A DNA stretch of 55,819 bases, the filler included, from Platydemus manokwari (lineage: Eukaryota), in NCBI GenBank assembly GCA_037951405.1. It is 5 parts of 5 records of this genome, joined end to end, with 100 filler letters (N's around TTAATTAATTAA, not from the genome) between each part and the next. Parts side by side here need not be neighbours in the genome. Positions count along the whole stretch, not along the records: positions 36,780 to 45,926 come from JBBMOY011292428.1; 4 more parts are not named here. One strand, written 5' to 3'. The notes beneath the pieces were generated by a model. The model saw only the letters and a program-made list of their open reading frames with translations. It ran no database searches and had not been told where the DNA came from. Of this stretch, positions 36,780-45,926 are shown in pieces. The stretch's first letter is position 1. The number at the start of each line of letters is the position of its first letter. A program made the translations under genes and the position numbers.

Positions 36780-37103
36780 ATTTAATATTTGATTACAAAC
36801 AATTAAAATTCTTTTTAAGTACTTAAATAATAAATTAATTTTTTTTAATGAATATAATTAAATAACCTACGTCGATTTTTGTAATAAACTTCGCAAATTT
36901 TAAATTTTATAATTTATTTTTGTTAAAATTTTTAAATTTCATTTTTTATACTGCAAATTAAAGAGCTATTCTTCCATTTTTATCACATTTAGCCTTAGTA
37001 AACTTTCTATGATTTTTTATTTAAAATAGAAGGCTTAATTAGAATCAATAAATTAATTTTTTATCCCAATAATAACTCAAATAAAATTCTTCTAACTCAA
37101 AAA

Positions 37104-38891
37104 TTAATCCGGAAAATTTACACTACACAAATTATTATCCATTTCTTCATTTTTCAATTGAAAATCAAAATCTTCTTCAAAAGTAATTTGATTGGATGAA
37201 TTCAGAGGACATCCTGAACTTTCAAGATTCTCTTCGACATATTTCAAAGGAATTCTTTCCAAAAACATTTGAAATTGTTCAAATTCATAATTAAGAGTAC
37301 AAAAACCTTTTGGATAGCAAGTAATAATAGGTTTCGGAGTGTTTCTTAACAAAAATCTTATTCTTTTGGCCTTTTTGGCCATATATTTTATATAAACATC
37401 GTTTTGAGATGTTTTAAAAATCGGAAACACAGGATCTGCAGCATCAGAGGCACACCCAGAATCGTTTGTAGATATATCAAAGTTGAAAACCGTTGGCTTA
37501 CATTTAGGTTCGTCATCATCATATGATTGGGAAACATCTAACTTAGCGGGAAGACTTTCTACACTTTCTACTGGGGATGCAGAACATACTGAACAACCTC
37601 CAGATTCCGACTTTTGCCCTAATTGTAAAAATGATTGGCTATCATCCATCCAATTAGATATTCCTTCATAGAGTTCACATTGAGCTGGTTCATCGGATCG
37701 ATTCAAAGAGCATTCACCACATTTCCTTTTCTTATTATTAGTATTTGAATTTAAGCAATTGTTTTGATTTTCACATAATAATGCTTCATAATGTTTTCTT
37801 AAAAATATAGACAATGAGTCGATATCACTTTGAAAATTATAAGAGCTCTTTAGTGGTTTGATAGTATCAATAATACTTTTTCTCTGAGATCTTGGTTGAA
37901 ATATTGTAACAAACGACTTCATCAAAGCTTTGGTAACCTCATGACAATCGGAACATGCCAATGACCATCCCTTTATTATATATCCTTCACTGATGAAAGA
38001 ATCAAAAACCGTTCTTACGAGCCATATTTCTTGATTAATTTCGGAATTGTTTGTAGCCTTGATATTGAAAAATTCGCAAAATTCTCGCGGAATATCTGAA
38101 ATTCTAAATGGTGACCAATCTCTGAACAATAATCTTGAACTTATCAAACCGGCAGCAAATATATTTCTTAGATAATCTGTATTAAAATAATTTCCGATAT
38201 TTTTATTTTGTATTGAATTAAGAAGATCAGCAAAATAACCGTGATTTTCTTCTGAGACTAACAAATCCTTAACAATGTCTTCTGGATCTTTGTTTTTGCT
38301 AAACCTAGAATTATCTTCCTGAACTGGAAAAAGTTTCAGTTGACCCGAATCGGTTATAAGGACATTGGTGAGGTAAAATAAATTATTAAGATTGATTTCA
38401 TTCAAATGCTCTACTAGCTCAAATAACCAAATGATAAATTGCAATGCAACATTCTCGATATTGAAAGACCATCTGGTTGAATCCTCTTTATAAATTTGAT
38501 CAATACACGGGTTCTTGTTTTCGTTTGAAAAATAAATGCCCGGTGATTTGAAAGGATATCTTATCAGTGTAATATAATCATCCAATGTGCAAAAGCAGTC
38601 TTCAAAAACAAGCCACGTTACGGTAGAATTTTCTTGCGCAACCAATTCTTGAGTAAGCTTCAAAATCAATTCACTGTCACAAAACGGTTTGCATTTGATT
38701 TGTTGAAGAACTTCATTCTTATACGAAGAAAGAATTGATTGAAGCGTGACATGTTTCAATGTCTGACTTTGAAGTACGAAAATCAAGCACGAATACTGTC
38801 CTATTATATTGATATGTTTAATTTTGAAAAGAGTGTCATTGTTGGAGCTATTCAAAATGGATTCATAATTTAGATGAATGTCTGAATTCAT
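37104..38891 (-). CDS. Intronless 595-aa divergent protein-kinase-like protein (pseudokinase)
   Basis: 1.8-kb intact ORF. WLVFEDCFCTLDDYI resembles the hinge/subdomain V, LTNVLITDSGQLKL subdomains VIb-VII, and NIFAAGLISSRLLFRDWSPF subdomain IX. No GxGxxG, HRD or DFG. Confidence 0.7.
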   Translation of the reverse strand: MNSDIHLNYESILNSSNNDTLFKIKHINIIGQYSCLIFVLQSQTLKHVTLQSILSSYKNEVLQQIKCKPFCDSELILKLTQELVAQENSTVTWLVFEDCFCTLDDYITLIRYPFKSPGIYFSNENKNPCIDQIYKEDSTRWSFNIENVALQFIIWLFELVEHLNEINLNNLFYLTNVLITDSGQLKLFPVQEDNSRFSKNKDPEDIVKDLLVSEENHGYFADLLNSIQNKNIGNYFNTDYLRNIFAAGLISSRLLFRDWSPFRISDIPREFCEFFNIKATNNSEINQEIWLVRTVFDSFISEGYIIKGWSLACSDCHEVTKALMKSFVTIFQPRSQRKSIIDTIKPLKSSYNFQSDIDSLSIFLRKHYEALLCENQNNCLNSNTNNKKRKCGECSLNRSDEPAQCELYEGISNWMDDSQSFLQLGQKSESGGCSVCSASPVESVESLPAKLDVSQSYDDDEPKCKPTVFNFDISTNDSGCASDAADPVFPIFKTSQNDVYIKYMAKKAKRIRFLLRNTPKPIITCYPKGFCTLNYEFEQFQMFLERIPLKYVEENLESSGCPLNSSNQITFEEDFDFQLKNEEMDNNLCSVNFPD

Positions 38892-40391
38892 TTGTTTTCC
38901 ATATATTAATTTATTATTTTATTGATTCAGTATCTAAGCGTCAATTTGTATATTGAAACCAACTTACCACATGCCAACGTCACTGAAGTAAAAATGTCAT
39001 GCTTATTTTATGTCGGTATGATTATTATAAATCAAATATAATTTTAATATTTTCCTGTTCCTACTTATATAGTGAATATTTTATGCGTAAAATTAGATTC
39101 AATTAACCTGTATTGAAATATTCGGCAAAACTTTATCGAGAGATATTGTCAATAAAAACTTAAATCAATAAAGTATTTGACTCTTATAATCTCAACGTTA
39201 AACCTGTTGAAGGTTGAAAAAATGTTGAAAGTAATGGTTTTTATTATCGATTTTAAGGATTTTTAGGGAGGCAGAGATTTGTCAAAATTTAATAATTATT
39301 ATTTCTGCTTCCATTAAGAATACTAATTAAAAACTTAATGAAAAACCTCTCATTGTACTTATGACACCTTATTAACGTTCTTATTAAACTCTCGGTTTGT
39401 CCCGCAACACCAAAAGTGATAACAGTGCTTATCAACTACTAAAGAAAGATAAAGATAATGTTAATGGGTTTTGTTGCGTTGTACGTTTCTGAATAATAAA
39501 TATTAAAATGATTTTTGCTATAATTTATTGGCTGACACCTTGTAGGGTCTCAGTGAAATGGATTAAAAATCCGAATGACAAATATAACTGAAAAATGATT
39601 TCTTTAATAGAAAATAGGAGTATGTTCATAAAGTAGTTCGACACCAAAATATTATTTAAGGAAATAAAAACAACGAAAATGAAATTCTACAAGATTAGTA
39701 AAAACACAAATTTTGTCGTTGTTAAAATCCTAAAAAGTGCAGTGACACTTGGTAATTTTTGAATTAAAACAACTGGTAAAATGATATTAGAGCATTTATT
39801 TTTAGCTCAAATACACCTGGAAAAGAATACTATCGACCTTAGGATATCAAATCTGACTCTGATAATTTCCCTTAATTACAATCTTTGTAATCATTCAAAT
39901 CCATCAATTCTAGTTCATGATAAATTAATGCGTGCCGCACATGAATACTAATATTAGTAAAGTTGATTTGTAAAAACAAAGAAATGCATTTTCCCGAAAT
40001 ATGTCCAGCATAATAATTATTAACAATTTCACATAATATCCTCAGAAGTAAATTTCCCAATTTAAATCTGATCAGATAATCAAATTAGATAAACAAATAC
40101 CAAGTGTTATTAGCGTAGAGATATTTTTAATTGATATATTTGTTGGTTTCGTTATTTAAAATCCGAATAACATTTTCACAAATCTGCAACCCATAATCAA
40201 AGTTCACCAAGTACTGCAAAAAAGCAATTTTTACCAATCGTTGGTTGGAAAATTTATTTATAAACATACAAATGACCTTCACAGACTCGCTTACAAATAA
40301 CAACAAATCAAAATTCGTTTTAAGGACTAACAAAATCAATCAAAAAAAACTAAATAAAAAATAAAACAAATGAAAAATCAACTAAGCAATC

Positions 40392-42173
40392 TTATGTTTT
40401 ACGTTTACGAATTTCCATTATGTGAGTTGATTTTGAATCTGACTTTTGAGACGGTTTTATTTTATTTGCTTGTGGCTTATCGGCAATCTCACAATTCATT
40501 CCACAATCACCGTTGACGATTCTTCCTAAAAAATTAATTTTATCACACTATTTTCTTTTCGTAAATCCAAAAATCTTTACATTTTCAAGCTCACTGCTAT
40601 TAATCAGAAACGATTTCAAAATATAAAATAACTTTGTATTGGTAACCACATGTCTACAACTGATTCTACCATTAAACAGTAACTATGGTTTCAATAGAAT
40701 TACTAATGGAAAATCTCTACAGATTTATAATAGTTCTATATTTAAATTGGCATAAGTTTCATTGGAGATGCTCTTTAGAAAATAAAACAAGAATCTTTAT
40801 AATAAAATTAGCAATTGTGCTAGAAAACACCACAGAAAAGAAATTTATGAACAAAGCAGAACAGTTCTTAAAAGTCGAAATTAACATACACGAGCAATTC
40901 AGGTTTTAAATCTTATAATGAAAATATTTTAAACAATTTTCAAACTCATGAGTGTTAAGCTGGATATTGCATAATTATAATGAATTTGGTACACATTCCA
41001 GGCATTTACGCAATATATAAGTTTGAAGGAAATCAGCTCACAAATATTGATTTTTAACCAAAGACCATTAGTTGGGAAATCTAAATCTAACGACATAAAT
41101 CTTAAAATATTGTAAAATCTATATAATTTCTGGATCAAGGCCTAAAATGACTAAATAACTTGTCAAACTCTATAATTTTTAATACTCTATAATAATCCTA
41201 TAATTTCCCACATTCCTTTCGTTTGTGAATGTATGAGAAGCAAAATTTATAAATAAACAAATAAAAACTTACATTGATTGATAACAAAAATATTTGCAAT
41301 TTTATTTGAAGACAAACATTGAAAATGAAAACACTACTTCATGAGGAAAAGTGCAACTTAAAAATAAAAATACATGTGCAAATAAGTTTCTTTATCCAAA
41401 ATAGCTCTTGACACAACATTTAATATGGTACATTAAAATCCTAAGAAATCACAGCACAAAGTAAACACTATCATAACAACTATGAGTGTTTCCGTACGTT
41501 ACATGATTGGGATTTTACAACACAACTCATGGCTATCATATTCAATTCGAGACATCTGGCAGTTCTGGATCTACTAACGAAAGAAGAACTAAATCATGTA
41601 AACCTTCCAAATAGTAGTCAACATGAAATAAAATGAACCTTTGAAAACTGTCGACACCGACATAAAATTTCATAAATCATAAAATAAACACTAATTCTTT
41701 ATTGATTAGTGTTGTTTAATAAGTGGTATTAAATAAAGATATAGATTAACATCGATAATGAGCATTTGATTATCTGGCCGTAAAAATGTCACCATACTAC
41801 CTATAACTTGATTCTAATATTCAACAGAGATTAAAAAAGATAATCGAGAGTTGGACATGGTTTGTAAATAAATATTCCACAACTATCAATACAAAATAGG
41901 ATCTTATAAGTAAGATATCTTCGAATGAAAGTACATTTAACAGAAACGAATTAATAATTAAAAAGCAGATTATGCATTATACATCAAAACCTAATGAAGC
42001 GCATATAAAGTTATTAGATGGAAATATCGAAATTAAATCCATCGAAAGATATGAGATATCGAATTTAGAGTTCATAAAATATCATCAACAAATTTGACTA
42101 TTGAAGTGAAAATTGGTTAAGCCATTAACGGTTAACCATATGGTTATTCGAAAATTGGTTCAGGATGAAATCA

Positions 42174-42216
<43 letters not shown>

Positions 42217-44549
42217 CGTGCAAATAAACATGGATTGAAACAAAGTGAAAACTAATGCATAAAAATCTTTACTGATCGACAGAAATGTTACCAATATGAT
42301 ATAATAGGCATGAAACAAATAAATGTCACTGGAAAAAATGATGCTGTTAGGATCAATTAGTTTCAAATAATCGTTAAAAGGAGATAAAAATGAATAACAA
42401 ATATAAATAAATATCATGAATATTATAAGAAACAATGGTAAAAATACGAGTTCAGATGCAATATATCTGATCATTAAAACGATTAATATCAAAATTTAAC
42501 AAAAACTGTGACTGATATTTGGTTTATTGAAGCATGAAAAATAAAAATTTTAAATAAATTTAGTATTTTAAATACAAAAATGGATTAAATTTCATAAAAT
42601 AGATTAAGAAAACAAACTGATTGGTGAGATTTCTTCATCAATAGCAGCCTGAGTTACACAGCTGGAATTCACCGATGCTGGACATTTAGTTTTGCTATCA
42701 TCGGGAAGGCTTGTCTAAATGATAAATAAAGAAATAATTTATTTTTTGATATTTTCGATGTCAAATAGTAAATGTCACTGTGATAGAACATGTTGTTAGG
42801 ATCGATACATTCGAAATAATATCACATCAATCGAAGATTAAATAGAAATATCATTTTGTCACACACGCACACACACATATATATGTGTGTGTGATATGAA
42901 ATGCGACTGAGTTAATACATTTAAAATAATGAAAATTAATGCATATTATTCCACAAGTGATTGGATATTAAAAAATTGATTACTGAAAGAAAGTATTAGC
43001 AGGATTTAATTTTTTGAAAAATTGGCCCAAATTTAAACCATCAATAATCGATGTTAGTGGAAATACTTTTACATTTATCGTTAAACTCATATCTTTTCCA
43101 TCGTTTTATAAGTACTCAAACTCGACCGAAGATCATGCTAACAGTGTCCATAAATTGTCAATAGCAACGAATTCTTCCAAAATATTAAGACCTAACTACA
43201 TTCGACAAAAGCCAAAAAATAAAAAAATCAATGGGAAGCTCAAAGATTTGCTGTTCCCGTCACTCGAAGCCCATTATAGCTTCGGACTCATACCAAGAAG
43301 ATACAACTATAAAGAACCTATTATATATTTCAAAGCTGACATGAGCGATTTTCCCAACGCATCGTGAAGAACATTTTTATGTGAAATTAACATTAGTTAT
43401 TAGATAAGAAAACAAAATTCGTTGCTAAGATTATTCTTTTAACCACAATGGAGTATATCATACTCGAATGAAAAAATAAATTATGGTTAAATCATAAGTA
43501 TGAAATAATATATCAAAAAACAAGAGGTAAATAACCGTGACATACATAAACAAGCACCTGTTCAGAATCTGTGGATACCAGTTCGATACTGTCATCATTC
43601 AATTTCGGAGGTTGACACTGGACAACAATTTCTCTTCCACCGCCTTCTTTTTTCTCATTGTAGACAATGGTTTCGTTAAATTTTGCGTTTTCCATTGGTA
43701 CAATCTTGTACAGTCTCTGTTTCCGTTTATGAGGTGGTAACCCAAACCATTTCAGAGATTTATCCAAATAAGGAGTATCTATATCGATTTTATTGTCAAT
43801 AATAAAGTGGCATAGTTATGATTTATTATTATATAATTTTTGTTGTTTCATGTACAAATACGAGTAACATCTTACTATTCTACTTTTCGTTGTCTATTAC
43901 CATTCCGCATTTTGATATGAAAACAACCACTTTAACCATATTTAATTCAGCCGTTTATTTTAATCAATCATCGTGCCATCCTTAATAATTGTCAACTCTA
44001 AAGAATATCGAGTTCATCAATATCATATCGCGATCTTAAGGCAATGACAATTTTGGTAAAAATAATACTAGCATAGCTTAAATATTACTTAAAATTCTCC
44101 TAAATGTAGGAATTATTAGATCCAAATAATAATTTTCTTAAAAAATTCGATCGAATCAAAAATATTACGGAATTAAAATCTTCAAAGTTGAAATGTTACT
44201 CAGAAATTTTTATGATTTTTCGTTTCTAACAGATACCTCCACATAGTGTTCCCATTCTTAATAATATCTTTACTCCATAAATAATATTTTTACTCTTAAA
44301 TAAAATTCAGTATATAGCCAAGCATGACATGTATGAAATGTGGTTTGTTGAAATTTTCTGAATTATAGTTGACACAATTGATATTTCCGAAGATGTACTT
44401 GATTAAGAAAATGAATAAATTTATTAACAGACTTGTGTTGTTTTATACAATAATAAAATTATAATGCTGACATTGATTCATGATAACCTCCTATTTTCAA
44501 AATAATTCCCAATATCGCCATTCGGAGTTATCAGTTATTAACAATAATG

Positions 44550-44603
<54 letters not shown>

Positions 44604-45703
44604 TGACAAAAATTCTAATTTCATTTATTAAAATTAATAAAATCATGCAAAATTCAGTCTAAAAAAATGTAATTATTAAATATATCACCACTTATTATCA
44701 ATTAATAATATATTTATATAAAAATATTCTGTTGATCACAATAAAAAATATATGGGTCCATTACCGGGTTAAAAACCATTGTGAACACCAAATAAACAAA
44801 TTAGAAAATGAAAAACCATCAAAGGAAAAAGTGAGACATTCAAGCACGCAACAAATTATTTTATTTTCAATAATATTGGTTTTGATTGCAGTAAGCTATT
44901 ATGGAGTGCCATATCTGTATTAGAGGGAAAAGTTTTGTGGTTGTCAAATCTGATGATAGTGAGTGTTATGTGTGTTGTAAATTTGAATCCCACCACAACC
45001 AAGGGGAGACACTAGGAAATCATTGAAGAAATCGAGAATGAAAACGATGTAAAAGTCATCACGAATCTTATGTTTTAAAGTGATAAAAGGACAGAATAAG
45101 TTCAGAAGGTAGATATATCATGTCAATAAATATCTCCCGCGCTAGAATTGATCTTATCATCATCCAATCACCGTTCTTGTAAAGATATCATGTACTTGGA
45201 AATAATATTAAAACCATTAATGAGCTGTAATTAGGGATTTAATAAAATGTATTTCAGAAGCCGCTACAAGAGGGCTAAAAGTTACAATTATCCAATAGCA
45301 ACAATTACCTCGGTATATGAGAAAATTTATGAAATCTTCAGTATCCACTGGTTGTCCTCTGGGATCCAGCCACAGTTCTGGTGGAATTACCGCCGTACTT
45401 TTTAAATCTTGACTTACTTTGACCGATTTAATTTTCGAAGCCAATCGATGGGATTTTTCTTCATTTTTCTCTTTAATTTTAGCTTTTTTAAATCTCTGTG
45501 TTGCATTGGCTAAAATAACTCGTGATATTCGTTGAGAATGCGATATCTCTTTGTGATTATAAAGCAGTTTCTTGGGTTTCTGAAGTAATTTTTCATTCTT
45601 CGGCTTGGTGGATTTGACTCTAACTTTTTCATTTGGAGAAATGCCTTCCGATGATGACATTTTCGTTGGTGATCGATTGGGACTGGAAGGGCTCAAGTTC
45701 TGA
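40392..45703 (-). CDS. JARID2-like: JARID2-like protein, N-terminal PRC2-binding module only (5' end unresolved)
   Basis: In-phase GT-AG exons 45703(or ATG 45660)-45309, 43778-43558, 42714-42618 and 40525-40392. The first junction yields TEDFINFLIYR|DTPYLDKSLKWFG vs human JARID2 [24 protein letters not shown] (recalled). The last junction is less certain; read-through would stop at 42604. Confidence 0.7.
44541..44601. repeat. (AAT)n microsatellite
   Basis: About 17-20 AAT units; similar tracts at 18371-18413 and 45725-45802. Confidence 0.95.
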
Positions 45704-45926
45704 CTAAATATTATGCAAATATTCATAATAATGATAATAATAGTTACAATGATAATAAAAATAACGATAATAATAATAATTACAATAATAATAATAATCA
45801 TAATCTTAATAGTAGTAATTGTGAATTAAGCTTATACCATACTAAAATGCAATAAAATAAGTAAGCGAATTATGACATGGCGGATTCAAAATATTATTCA
45901 AATATTAATAATAATAATAGCAATGA

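What the first reader, a model, noticed from the sequence alone, without database searches (positions are those of the whole stretch)
40392..45703. Candidate 'mini-JARID2': PRC2-docking motif without the Jumonji/ARID half
Seen: splicing 45309 to 43778 in phase gives AVIPP...TEDFINFLIYRDTPYLDKSLKWFG, and two further in-phase exons end the protein at about 267 aa (from ATG 45660) with ...EIRKRKT*. The motif is split by an intron, so the ORF track does not show it whole. Known: this matches the JARID2 transrepression segment ([24 protein letters not shown]) that binds SUZ12, and canonical JARID2 is over 1000 aa with JmjN, ARID and JmjC domains. As I recall, human JARID2 has a phase-1 intron at the same R|G position. 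I found no JmjN/ARID/JmjC exon in the remaining 3.6 kb of contig, which holds an unrelated ORF. Inference: a short stand-alone PRC2 accessory subunit or a split JARID2.
Basis: partly seen in the sequence, partly recalled or inferred. Interest (0 to 1): 0.78.

Follow-up and report, generated by a model that had tools for sequence, protein, structure and literature searches.

The report
Short gene with JARID2 docking motif
An AT-rich animal contig carries a gene whose only recognisable feature is the short peptide by which JARID2 docks onto the Polycomb complex PRC2, split by the same intron as in fish and invertebrate JARID2; as assembled the gene stops after about 270-300 residues without the Jumonji/ARID half, but no RNA data yet show that it is really that short.

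Summary
The four minus-strand exons join in phase with GT..AG borders and give 267 aa ending EIRKRKT*. The exon 1/exon 2 joint creates TEDFINFLIYR|DTPYLDKSLKWFG.

The best PDB match of this motif is human JARID2 residues 150-179, the TR segment that binds SUZ12. It scores 63, against a maximum of 42 in 3000 shuffles. On the opposite strand, even with free splicing, the maximum is 28.

The intron lies after the first base of the codon that follows the Arg. That is the same place and phase as in a catfish contig, in ten vertebrate genomic ORF fragments, and in a canonical JARID2 locus from a metagenome. Descent from JARID2 is therefore very likely (about 0.95).

The 'mini' claim is plausible but unproven. 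Coding signal runs on to the stop at 40392. No JmjN, ARID or JmjC is found in the 6.8 kb downstream of exon 2, while a positive control finds them. A separate conserved gene follows on the same strand. However, there is no RNA run, no relative of the gene, and the contig is short.

The AQRKFAQ methyl-lysine stretch and the UIM are not recognisable.

The parts
45309..45660 (-). Exon 1 (CDS from ATG 45660; 117 codons plus 1 base). It is Lys-rich and holds the first half of the TR motif at its 3' end. The reading frame stays open upstream to an AG at 45705-45704 and to an ATG at 45726, so the true 5' end is uncertain. The contig ends 266 nt upstream of ATG 45660.
   Evidence: Codon-usage score +0.23 bits/codon in frame and negative in the other two frames. 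It is the highest-scoring coding segment after the 595-aa ORF.
45310..45342 (-). TR motif, first half: TEDFINFLIYR. Human, fish and L002 all have [11 protein letters not shown].
   Evidence: Fixed-register probability 1e-7.
43779..45308 (-). Intron 1, GT..AG, phase 1. It lies after the first base of the codon that follows the motif's Arg, the same place and phase as in JARID2 of a catfish (L003) and in the canonical locus L002.
43558..43778 (-). Exon 2. It opens with the second half of the TR motif and then a basic cluster, PPHKRKQR, which may be a nuclear localisation signal (inference).
   Evidence: (+0.31 bits/codon in frame).
43741..43778 (-). TR motif, second half: (D)TPYLDKSLKWFG. Human has [13 protein letters not shown] and L002 has GSSALPPHLEFFN.
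   Evidence: It is the best of 346 acceptor-derived peptides (26 against 14 for the next); probability 1e-5 per site.
42618..42714 (-). Exon 3 (predicted). GC 0.43. Its donor is weak (CA|GTTTGT), and an alternative donor lies 4 nt further on (exon end 42614).
   Evidence: (+0.38 bits/codon).
41498..41588 (-). Optional extra exon, picked by the best-scoring exon chain. It is uncertain and would give 306 aa instead of 267.
   Evidence: (11.3 bits, near the noise level).
40392..40525 (-). Terminal exon (predicted) with stop TAA at 40394-40392. An alternative acceptor at 40547 keeps the same frame. The protein ends ...EIRKRKT*.
   Evidence: 18.8 bits. The exon chain ending here scores 34.4 bits, against a null mean of 16.4 and a maximum of 27.
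37104..38891 (-). Neighbouring gene, not part of the finding. It is a 595-aa single-exon ORF with its own ATG. An in-frame stop lies 6 codons upstream with no AG in between.
   Evidence: One homologue, P0001, 50-51% identical over the whole length. No Pfam hit and no PDB hit.

Best explanation
This is a highly diverged derivative of the JARID2 gene lineage that keeps the SUZ12-docking 'transrepression' (TR) peptide and, as assembled, little else.

Shown: exon 1 and exon 2 join in phase to give a 24-residue match to JARID2 TR. All hydrophobic positions are kept or conservatively replaced: F, I/L, F, L, I/C, Y/L, R, P, L, L/M, W/Y, F, G. The intron that splits the motif lies in the same codon and phase as in fish JARID2 and in an invertebrate-type JARID2 locus.

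Inferred from established knowledge: in JARID2 this peptide sits in the Zn/ZnB pocket of SUZ12 (PDB 5WAI, as described in PMC7000746). The product should therefore dock on the PRC2 core as a PRC2.2-type accessory subunit.

Inferred from the locus: the coding signal continues through one to three small exons to a stop at 40392. This gives a basic protein of 267-306 aa, probably nuclear, without JmjN, ARID, JmjC or zinc finger. It also lacks the AQRKFAQ methyl-lysine stretch and a recognisable UIM. It would therefore occupy the SUZ12 pocket without the canonical EED-mediated allosteric activation and without H2AK119ub reading. It could act as an adaptor for something else or as a competitor for that pocket.
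For: Gene model. Motif: the top PDB hits are JARID2 150-179; score 63 against a shuffle maximum of 42; exact probability 1e-11 per register, and the second half is the best of 346 acceptors; no comparable match anywhere else on either strand, even with free splicing. Intron: all vertebrate genomic ORF fragments leave homology at FLCLR+G; catfish DNA reads AGA G|GTATTT; L002 shows both splice sites in phase 1. Shortness: all four exons score as coding in their own frame only. The best exon chain downstream of exon 2 scores 34.4 bits, against a null of 16.4 +/- 3.4 and a maximum of 27, and ends at 40392. No other coding-like minus-strand segment lies between 40392 and 38900. The next gene has its own start and cannot be joined in frame. 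Pfam and tblastn find no JmjN, ARID or JmjC in the piece. The same Pfam-on-ORF approach finds all three 5-7 kb downstream of the TR exon in L002. Literature: TR binds the SUZ12 Zn/ZnB pocket, and a K116A mutant still binds PRC2, so docking does not need the missing stretch.
Against: No RNA run holds the locus; the only holder is a DNA run with even depth over the introns. No relative of exon 1 exists among 1.84 billion representative proteins, in the word search or in the metagenome contigs, so exons 2-4 have no comparative support. The donor of intron 3 is weak, and the chain search prefers a slightly different set of middle exons. The piece ends 266 nt upstream of the ATG and 6.8 kb downstream of exon 2. 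A long intron holding a nested same-strand gene cannot be excluded. The JARID2 genes described in the sources read here, and the one whole locus seen here (L002), carry the Jumonji half. The rest of this genome could not be searched for a separate Jumonji/ARID gene, for SUZ12, or for a second, canonical JARID2.
Confidence: 0.55

Rival explanations
1. This is an ordinary long JARID2 gene broken by a fragmented assembly. Exons 1 and 2 are real. The true transcript splices from exon 2, or from a later small exon, across the 595-aa gene (nested in an intron) to JmjN/ARID/JmjC exons beyond 36780 on another contig. The predicted stop at 40392 belongs to a false or alternative exon.
For: The piece is only 9.1 kb, and the run's contigs are short and many (4.3 million records). 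Exons 3 and 4 are predictions; exon 3 is near the noise level (13.3 bits against about 11) and has a weak donor. The canonical locus seen here (L002) carries the Jumonji half.
Against: The exon chain that ends in the stop at 40392 scores well above every null sequence. The three introns seen are 0.8-2.1 kb, whereas this reading needs one longer than 6.8 kb holding a same-strand gene. In L002 the long, low-complexity middle exons follow the TR exon closely, and nothing like them is here.
Confidence: 0.28
2. This is a decaying remnant. The 5' exons of a former JARID2 gene were left behind after a rearrangement or the loss of the 3' half. They may be transcribed or not, and have no PRC2 function.
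For: The AQRKFAQ stretch is lost: TQRFKKA stands about 50 residues upstream of the motif. The UIM is not recognisable. There are no detectable relatives.
Against: The reading frame is intact across at least 191 codons and two exons, with canonical splice sites, in a genome where a stop is expected about every 12 codons (my estimate from the base composition; exon borders). The motif keeps every hydrophobic position, while the rest of the protein has diverged beyond recognition. This is the pattern expected under selection on the motif.
Confidence: 0.08
3. The resemblance is chance or convergent. The gene is unrelated, and a 24-residue stretch happens to look like JARID2 TR.
For: By itself the PDB E-value is only 0.34. 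Nothing else in the protein resembles JARID2.
Against: The fixed-register probability is 1e-11. Even with every GT/AG pair allowed, the control strand reaches 28 against 63 here. The shared intron position and phase are independent evidence (three introns in 804 nt give roughly 0.4% per site by chance). [quoted passage not shown]
Confidence: 0.05

Closest known systems
JARID2 (Jumonji), PRC2.2 accessory subunit: human (PDB 6C23, 6WKR, 7KSO), fish fragments P0007-P0015, and the canonical locus L002
   Same: The TR/SUZ12-docking peptide is shared: 12 of 24 residues are identical to human and the hydrophobic pattern is kept. [quoted passage not shown] The phase-1 intron follows the first base of the codon after the Arg of the motif.
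   Different: As assembled, the protein has about 270-300 aa against more than 1200. There is no JmjN, ARID, JmjC or zinc finger in the piece. The AQRKFAQ stretch around the methylated lysine is missing, although it is identical in the human chains, the fish fragments and L002 and reported as identical in all homologues analysed by Sanulli et al.. No significant UIM or N-terminal RPKRNII similarity is found. Four substitutions fall in the first half of the motif, which is invariant in all other sequences seen here.
DeltaN-JARID2 (PMC6356158, seen; abstract only read)
   Same: It is a natural form of JARID2 that carries only one half of the protein.
   Different: It is the reciprocal half. From my own knowledge of that paper (its body was not read here), DeltaN-JARID2 lacks the PRC2-interacting N-terminus and keeps the Jumonji half. 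The present gene would keep only the docking motif.
EPOP and other short, mostly disordered PRC2 accessory proteins
   Same: These are small or disordered proteins that attach to the SUZ12/RBBP4 docking lobe through short linear segments. EPOP's C-terminal segment overlaps the site of JARID2 TR (PMC12901234).
   Different: There is no sequence relationship. EPOP belongs to PRC2.1 and is known from mammals. The present protein carries the JARID2-type peptide itself.
Intron-retaining JARID2 isoforms of reptiles (PMC5470834)
   Same: Truncated products of a JARID2 gene are predicted.
   Different: In reptiles a regulated retention of intron 11 removes only the C-terminal zinc finger from an otherwise canonical gene. 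Here the gene itself appears to end before any Jumonji/ARID exon.

Membership tests
JARID2 | TR (transrepression) peptide that docks in the SUZ12 Zn/ZnB pocket: [24 protein letters not shown] in human | tested here: met
   Score 63 against a shuffle maximum of 42. The top PDB hits are JARID2 150-179. The match is unique in the piece on both strands. Binding itself was not tested.
JARID2 | Phase-1 intron directly after the Arg of ...FLCLR|G | tested here: met
   Window CGA G|GTAATT ... ATATAG|AT. Catfish L003 AGA G|GTATTT. L002 AGA G|GTCAGT ... TTTCAG|GA. Ten vertebrate genomic ORF fragments diverge after FLCLR+G. The human gene itself was not examined.
JARID2 | Seven-residue stretch AQRKFAQ around the PRC2-methylated lysine (K116 in human, K46 in Drosophila), which binds EED | tested here: not met
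   There is no significant similarity to human 101-149. The nearest string is TQRFKKA, at residues 54-60. The stretch is present unchanged in all fish fragments and in L002, and is reported as identical in all homologues analysed (PMC4352895).
JARID2 | Ubiquitin-interaction motif near the N-terminus (reader of H2AK119ub) | tested here: inconclusive
   BLASTP against human 21-51 gives no alignment. The local alignment is not above shuffles (P 0.10). UIMs are short and degenerate, and upstream exons could lie off the contig.
JARID2 | JmjN, ARID, JmjC and C5HC2 zinc-finger domains | tested here: inconclusive
   None was found by Pfam on the three exon and ORF translations and the nine further translations (the minus-strand ORFs of 40 aa or more from 39289 to 40339, a sample of other ORFs and segments further up, and one plus-strand segment). 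None was found by tblastn of the L002 domain ORFs on the whole piece. The method finds them in L002. They are absent from the 6.8 kb downstream of exon 2, but the contig ends there and the rest of the genome could not be searched.
PRC2 accessory subunit (functional class) | Physical association with SUZ12/PRC2 core | not testable with these tools
   Only single-chain folding is offered, and the organism's SUZ12 is not available.

The most novel reading that the evidence does not exclude
In this poorly sampled, fast-evolving animal lineage, JARID2 has been reduced to a free-standing protein of about 30 kDa. Its only conserved element is the SUZ12-docking peptide. The Jumonji/ARID half, the EED-activating methyl-lysine stretch and the ubiquitin reader would all have been shed or moved to another gene. 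If so, occupying the SUZ12 Zn/ZnB pocket would be the irreducible function of the family, and the enigmatic Jumonji half would be dispensable there. The protein would act as a plug or an adaptor rather than as an activator of PRC2.
Probability: 0.35. Interest if true: 0.65.

Novelty: new variant of a known kind. Interest (0 to 1): 0.5.

Why it matters
The role of the catalytically dead Jumonji half of JARID2 is still called unknown (PMC8864842; PMC4352895). A natural JARID2 derivative that keeps only the docking peptide would be an evolutionary experiment on which parts of the protein are indispensable. It would also give a minimal natural ligand of the SUZ12 pocket.

There is a practical gain that does not depend on the 'mini' question. 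The pair 'TEDF(L/I)xFLxxR + phase-1 intron + xxPxLxxx(L/M)x(Y/W/F)F(G/N)' works as a marker for JARID2-lineage genes in genomes where HMM and BLAST searches of the whole protein find nothing.

Tried and rejected
- **Exon 1 alone.** Pfam gave nothing. PDB gave only a chance hit to bL28m. The word search gave nothing. The full HMMER search of 1.84 billion representatives gave 0 hits. The metagenome scan gave nothing.
- **Synteny route.** I used the conserved 595-aa neighbour to fetch related loci. One homologue was found, on a 3.3-kb contig that starts 38 nt before its ATG, so it gives no upstream gene. The metagenome scan with the alignment gave nothing.
- **RNA evidence.** No RNA run holds the locus. 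The single holder, X1, is a DNA run with even depth across the introns.
- **My own impression of UIM, RPKRNII and K116 remnants in exon 1.** I tested this against tool-verified human fragments and L002. It is not significant, and I dropped it as evidence.
- **The idea that the 595-aa ORF is the missing 3' part of the gene.** Rejected. An in-frame stop lies 6 codons before its ATG with no AG in between. It has no Pfam or PDB similarity and gave no tblastn hit at E up to 50 on the JARID2 locus L002. AlphaFold2 on its two-sequence alignment gave pLDDT 30 and was unusable.
- **An 8-residue tblastn match (INFPTNDW, 40257-40234) to the JmjC end motif.** It is flanked by stops on both sides and has E about 1, so it is chance.
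- **Poly(A) signals.** They are uninformative in this AT-rich DNA.
- **Papers not held.** Chen et al. 2018 and Kasinath et al. 2021.
- **Left aside on purpose.** Hits P0003-P0005 are 95-100% identical to the human fragment, so their contigs might be human. I did not fetch or compare them, and I did not examine the human gene itself.
- **No reference for the spliced protein.** The spliced 267-aa protein has no reference, so it was not given to the protein-database, folding or atlas tools. Only a 54-residue stretch across the joint was typed.
Full report
**The piece**

Only window 36780-45926 is genome. It has no N, GC is about 28%, and it carries ATT, AT and AC microsatellites. No Rfam family and no tRNA is present. 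The single public run that holds it (X1) is DNA. Its contigs cover exons and introns alike at about 13x and agree with the window letter for letter. The sequence is therefore sound, but nothing is known about transcription.

**Check of the observation**

- 45660-45309 (352 nt)
- 43778-43558 (221 nt)
- 42714-42618 (97 nt)
- 40525-40392 (134 nt)

All have GT..AG borders. Together they make 804 nt and 267 aa ending EIRKRKT*. Exon 1 ends ...TAC CGA G|GTAATT and exon 2 begins ATATAG|AT ACT CCT. The joint is therefore phase 1 and reads TEDFINFLIYR|DTPYLDKSLKWFG.

**Is the motif JARID2-like beyond chance?**

Exon 1 alone hits nothing in Pfam or the PDB. A 54-residue stretch across the joint has JARID2 ('Protein Jumonji') as its top PDB hits, at residues 150-179 ([30 protein letters not shown]). 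The E-value of 0.34 is marginal against the whole PDB, so I tested the specific hypothesis in three ways.
- The local alignment of the model with the human TR fragment scores 63. In 3000 shuffles the mean is 21.4, the sd 3.3 and the maximum 42.
- With the amino-acid composition of this locus, the exact chance of such a score in one register is 1e-7 for the first half, 1e-5 for the second half and 1e-11 for the whole motif. Among all 346 AG acceptors downstream of the donor, the real one gives the best second half (26 against 14 for the next).
- I searched both strands of the piece allowing any GT donor, any AG acceptor, any split point and any phase. The search returns this very joint at 63, while the opposite strand, as a control of equal size, reaches only 28.

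Twelve of 24 residues are identical to human. Every hydrophobic position is kept or conservatively replaced.

**The intron**

A word search with tool-verified human residues 101-179 returned 15 short proteins. Most of them are ORFs called on genomic contigs of vertebrates. In all ten such ORFs the homology begins at RPRLQAQRKF and stops at ...[11 protein letters not shown] plus one Gly. After that the sequences are unrelated to one another. Two partial gene models end exactly at FLCLR. This is the signature of an exon that ends one base into the next codon, followed by GT (G|GT reads as Gly).

DNA confirms it in two loci:
- The catfish contig L003 reads AGA G|GTATTT.
- In L002, an 18-kb metagenome contig, the exon ends AGA G|GTCAGT. 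The intron is 94 nt, and the next exon starts TTTCAG|GA AGT TCC, giving R|GSSALPPHLEFFN.

L002 is a canonical JARID2 locus. Pfam finds JmjN (E 2e-15), ARID (3e-10) and JmjC (2e-8) on its ORFs, 5-7 kb downstream of the TR exon.

The window's intron lies at the same nucleotide of the same codon in the same phase. With three introns in 804 nt, a chance coincidence is about 0.4%, and this is independent of the residue match. I did not fetch hits P0003-P0005, which are 95-100% identical to the human fragment and could come from human contigs, and I did not examine the human gene.

Taken together, I put descent of this motif from the JARID2 lineage at about 0.95.

**What else of JARID2 is present?**

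Nothing recognisable.
- Human 21-51 (UIM region, verified) and 101-149 (K116 region, verified) give no alignment above shuffles.
- tblastn of the model on L002 finds only the TEDF half-motif.
- The seven-residue stretch AQRKFAQ is unchanged in all fish fragments and in L002. It is reported as identical in all Jarid2 homologues analysed, with F117 needed for EED binding (PMC4352895). Here TQRFKKA stands about 50 residues before the motif, which is not a match.
- The same paper shows that K116A does not impair PRC2 binding. Docking without this stretch is therefore plausible, but canonical allosteric activation is not.

**Is the protein really short?**

I trained a codon-usage score on the neighbouring 595-aa ORF, with the intronic sequence as background.
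- All four exons are positive in their own frame only: +0.23, +0.31, +0.38 and +0.13 bits per codon. Non-coding windows average -0.47, and stop-free non-coding windows average -0.15.
- A scan of both strands ranks exon 1, exon 2, exon 4 and exon 3 as the best minus-strand segments outside the 595-aa ORF. It finds no coding-like minus-strand segment between 40392 and 38900.
- A dynamic-programming search for the best exon chain downstream of exon 2 gives 34.4 bits. Sixty Markov sequences of the same length give 16.4 +/- 3.4 with a maximum of 27. The chain starts at 42714 and ends at the stop 40392, but it prefers a donor 4 nt later, an extra exon (41588-41498) and an acceptor at 40547, which makes 306 aa.

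So there is real coding signal up to 40392, while the middle exons are not settled. Every alternative inside the piece gives a protein of 200-306 aa.

Downstream, the 595-aa ORF (37104-38891) has its own ATG. An in-frame stop lies six codons before it with no AG in between. It is conserved end to end at 50-51% identity with its single homologue P0001. It is a separate gene on the same strand.

Pfam finds no JmjN, ARID or JmjC on the twelve translations tested: the four model exons, the 595-aa ORF, four minus-strand ORFs of 40 aa or more from 39289 to 40339, two further minus-strand segments and one plus-strand segment. tblastn of the L002 domain ORFs on the whole piece finds nothing either. 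One 8-residue hit is flanked by stops and is chance.

**What remains open**

- There is no RNA evidence.
- No homologue of the gene was found.
- The piece ends 266 nt upstream of the ATG, and the frame is open to an AG at 45705-45704.
- The piece ends 6.8 kb downstream of exon 2.
- The rest of the genome could not be searched.

A long JARID2 with a large intron holding a nested same-strand gene therefore stays a serious rival (0.28). The short protein is the better reading (0.55). A decaying remnant (0.08) and chance or convergence (0.05) are minor.

**Mechanism**

Shown: the motif and its intron. From the literature, JARID2 TR binds the SUZ12 Zn/ZnB pocket through hydrogen bonds and hydrophobic contacts (PDB 5WAI, as described in PMC7000746), and EPOP competes sterically for the same surface (PMC12901234).

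Inferred: the product docks on SUZ12 by this peptide. Being basic, with KRK-type clusters, it is probably nuclear. Lacking AQRKFAQ and a UIM, it would not activate PRC2 through EED or read H2AK119ub in the known way. It would then be a pocket occupant, either an adaptor or a competitor.

**Comparison and novelty**

The gene works like the N-terminal docking module of JARID2 and most likely descends from it. It fails or leaves open the other defining features of the family. I therefore file it as a new variant of a known kind, not as an ordinary member.

I know of no described stand-alone TR protein, and the four literature searches made here returned none. The known DeltaN-JARID2 is the reciprocal half. 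That is from my own knowledge of PMC6356158, of which only the abstract was seen here.

- AlphaFold2 of the neighbouring gene gave pLDDT 30.
- The spliced protein has no reference, so it was not sent to the database, folding or atlas tools.

Noticed in passing
window 37104-38891 (-): A 595-aa single-exon gene of unknown family lies here. It has no Pfam or PDB match. Only one homologue was found in 5.8 billion proteins (P0001, 612 aa, 50-51% identical along the whole length, from a Logan contig of run SRR33002330 with much higher GC). Conserved blocks include KHINIIG, LITDSGxLKLFP (reminiscent of a kinase catalytic-loop/DFG region, by eye only), EGISNWM and TPKPxITCYPKG. AlphaFold2 with two sequences gave pLDDT 30.
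   Followed up: partly
window 42999-43364 (+): A 122-codon stop-free segment lies on the opposite strand inside intron 2. It scores 20.5 bits with the codon model, more than exons 3 and 4. Pfam gives only a sub-threshold EcoRII-C hit (E 0.12). It could be an antisense exon, a transposon relic or chance.
   Followed up: partly
L002:6347-14506 (+): This 18-kb ENA metagenome contig (ERZ25069296, GC 40%) holds a compact, apparently complete canonical JARID2 gene. It has HRPKRNIIPKNF, a UIM-like EEKELKKALSASLKQ, AQRKFAQ, the TR motif split by a 94-nt phase-1 intron, then JmjN, ARID and JmjC. It is 56% identical to human in the K116/TR exon. The organism is unknown. It serves well as an outgroup reference.
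   Followed up: partly
L003:464-3409 (+): The catfish (Tachysurus ichikawai) GenBank model 'protein Jumonji isoform X1' of 105 aa (P0008) reads through the JARID2 intron after FLCLR+G. The locus did not translate to the listed protein. It looks like an artefactual gene model on a 5.4-kb contig.
   Followed up: partly
window 45481-45501 (-), residues 54-60: TQRFKKA stands about 50 residues upstream of the TR motif, roughly where JARID2 has AQRKFAQ (38 residues upstream in human, 34 in L002). It looks like a scrambled version, but it is not statistically supported.
   Followed up: yes
window 44539-44601, 45725-45819, 42174-42201, 42853-42901: There are long (TAA/ATT)n arrays, one of which forms the contig end and the poly-Ile 'ORF' upstream of the ATG. 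There is also an (AT)14 array flanked by (AC)n, and a CA/TG palindromic microsatellite. Logan contigs break at these places, which explains why the assembly is fragmented here.
   Followed up: no
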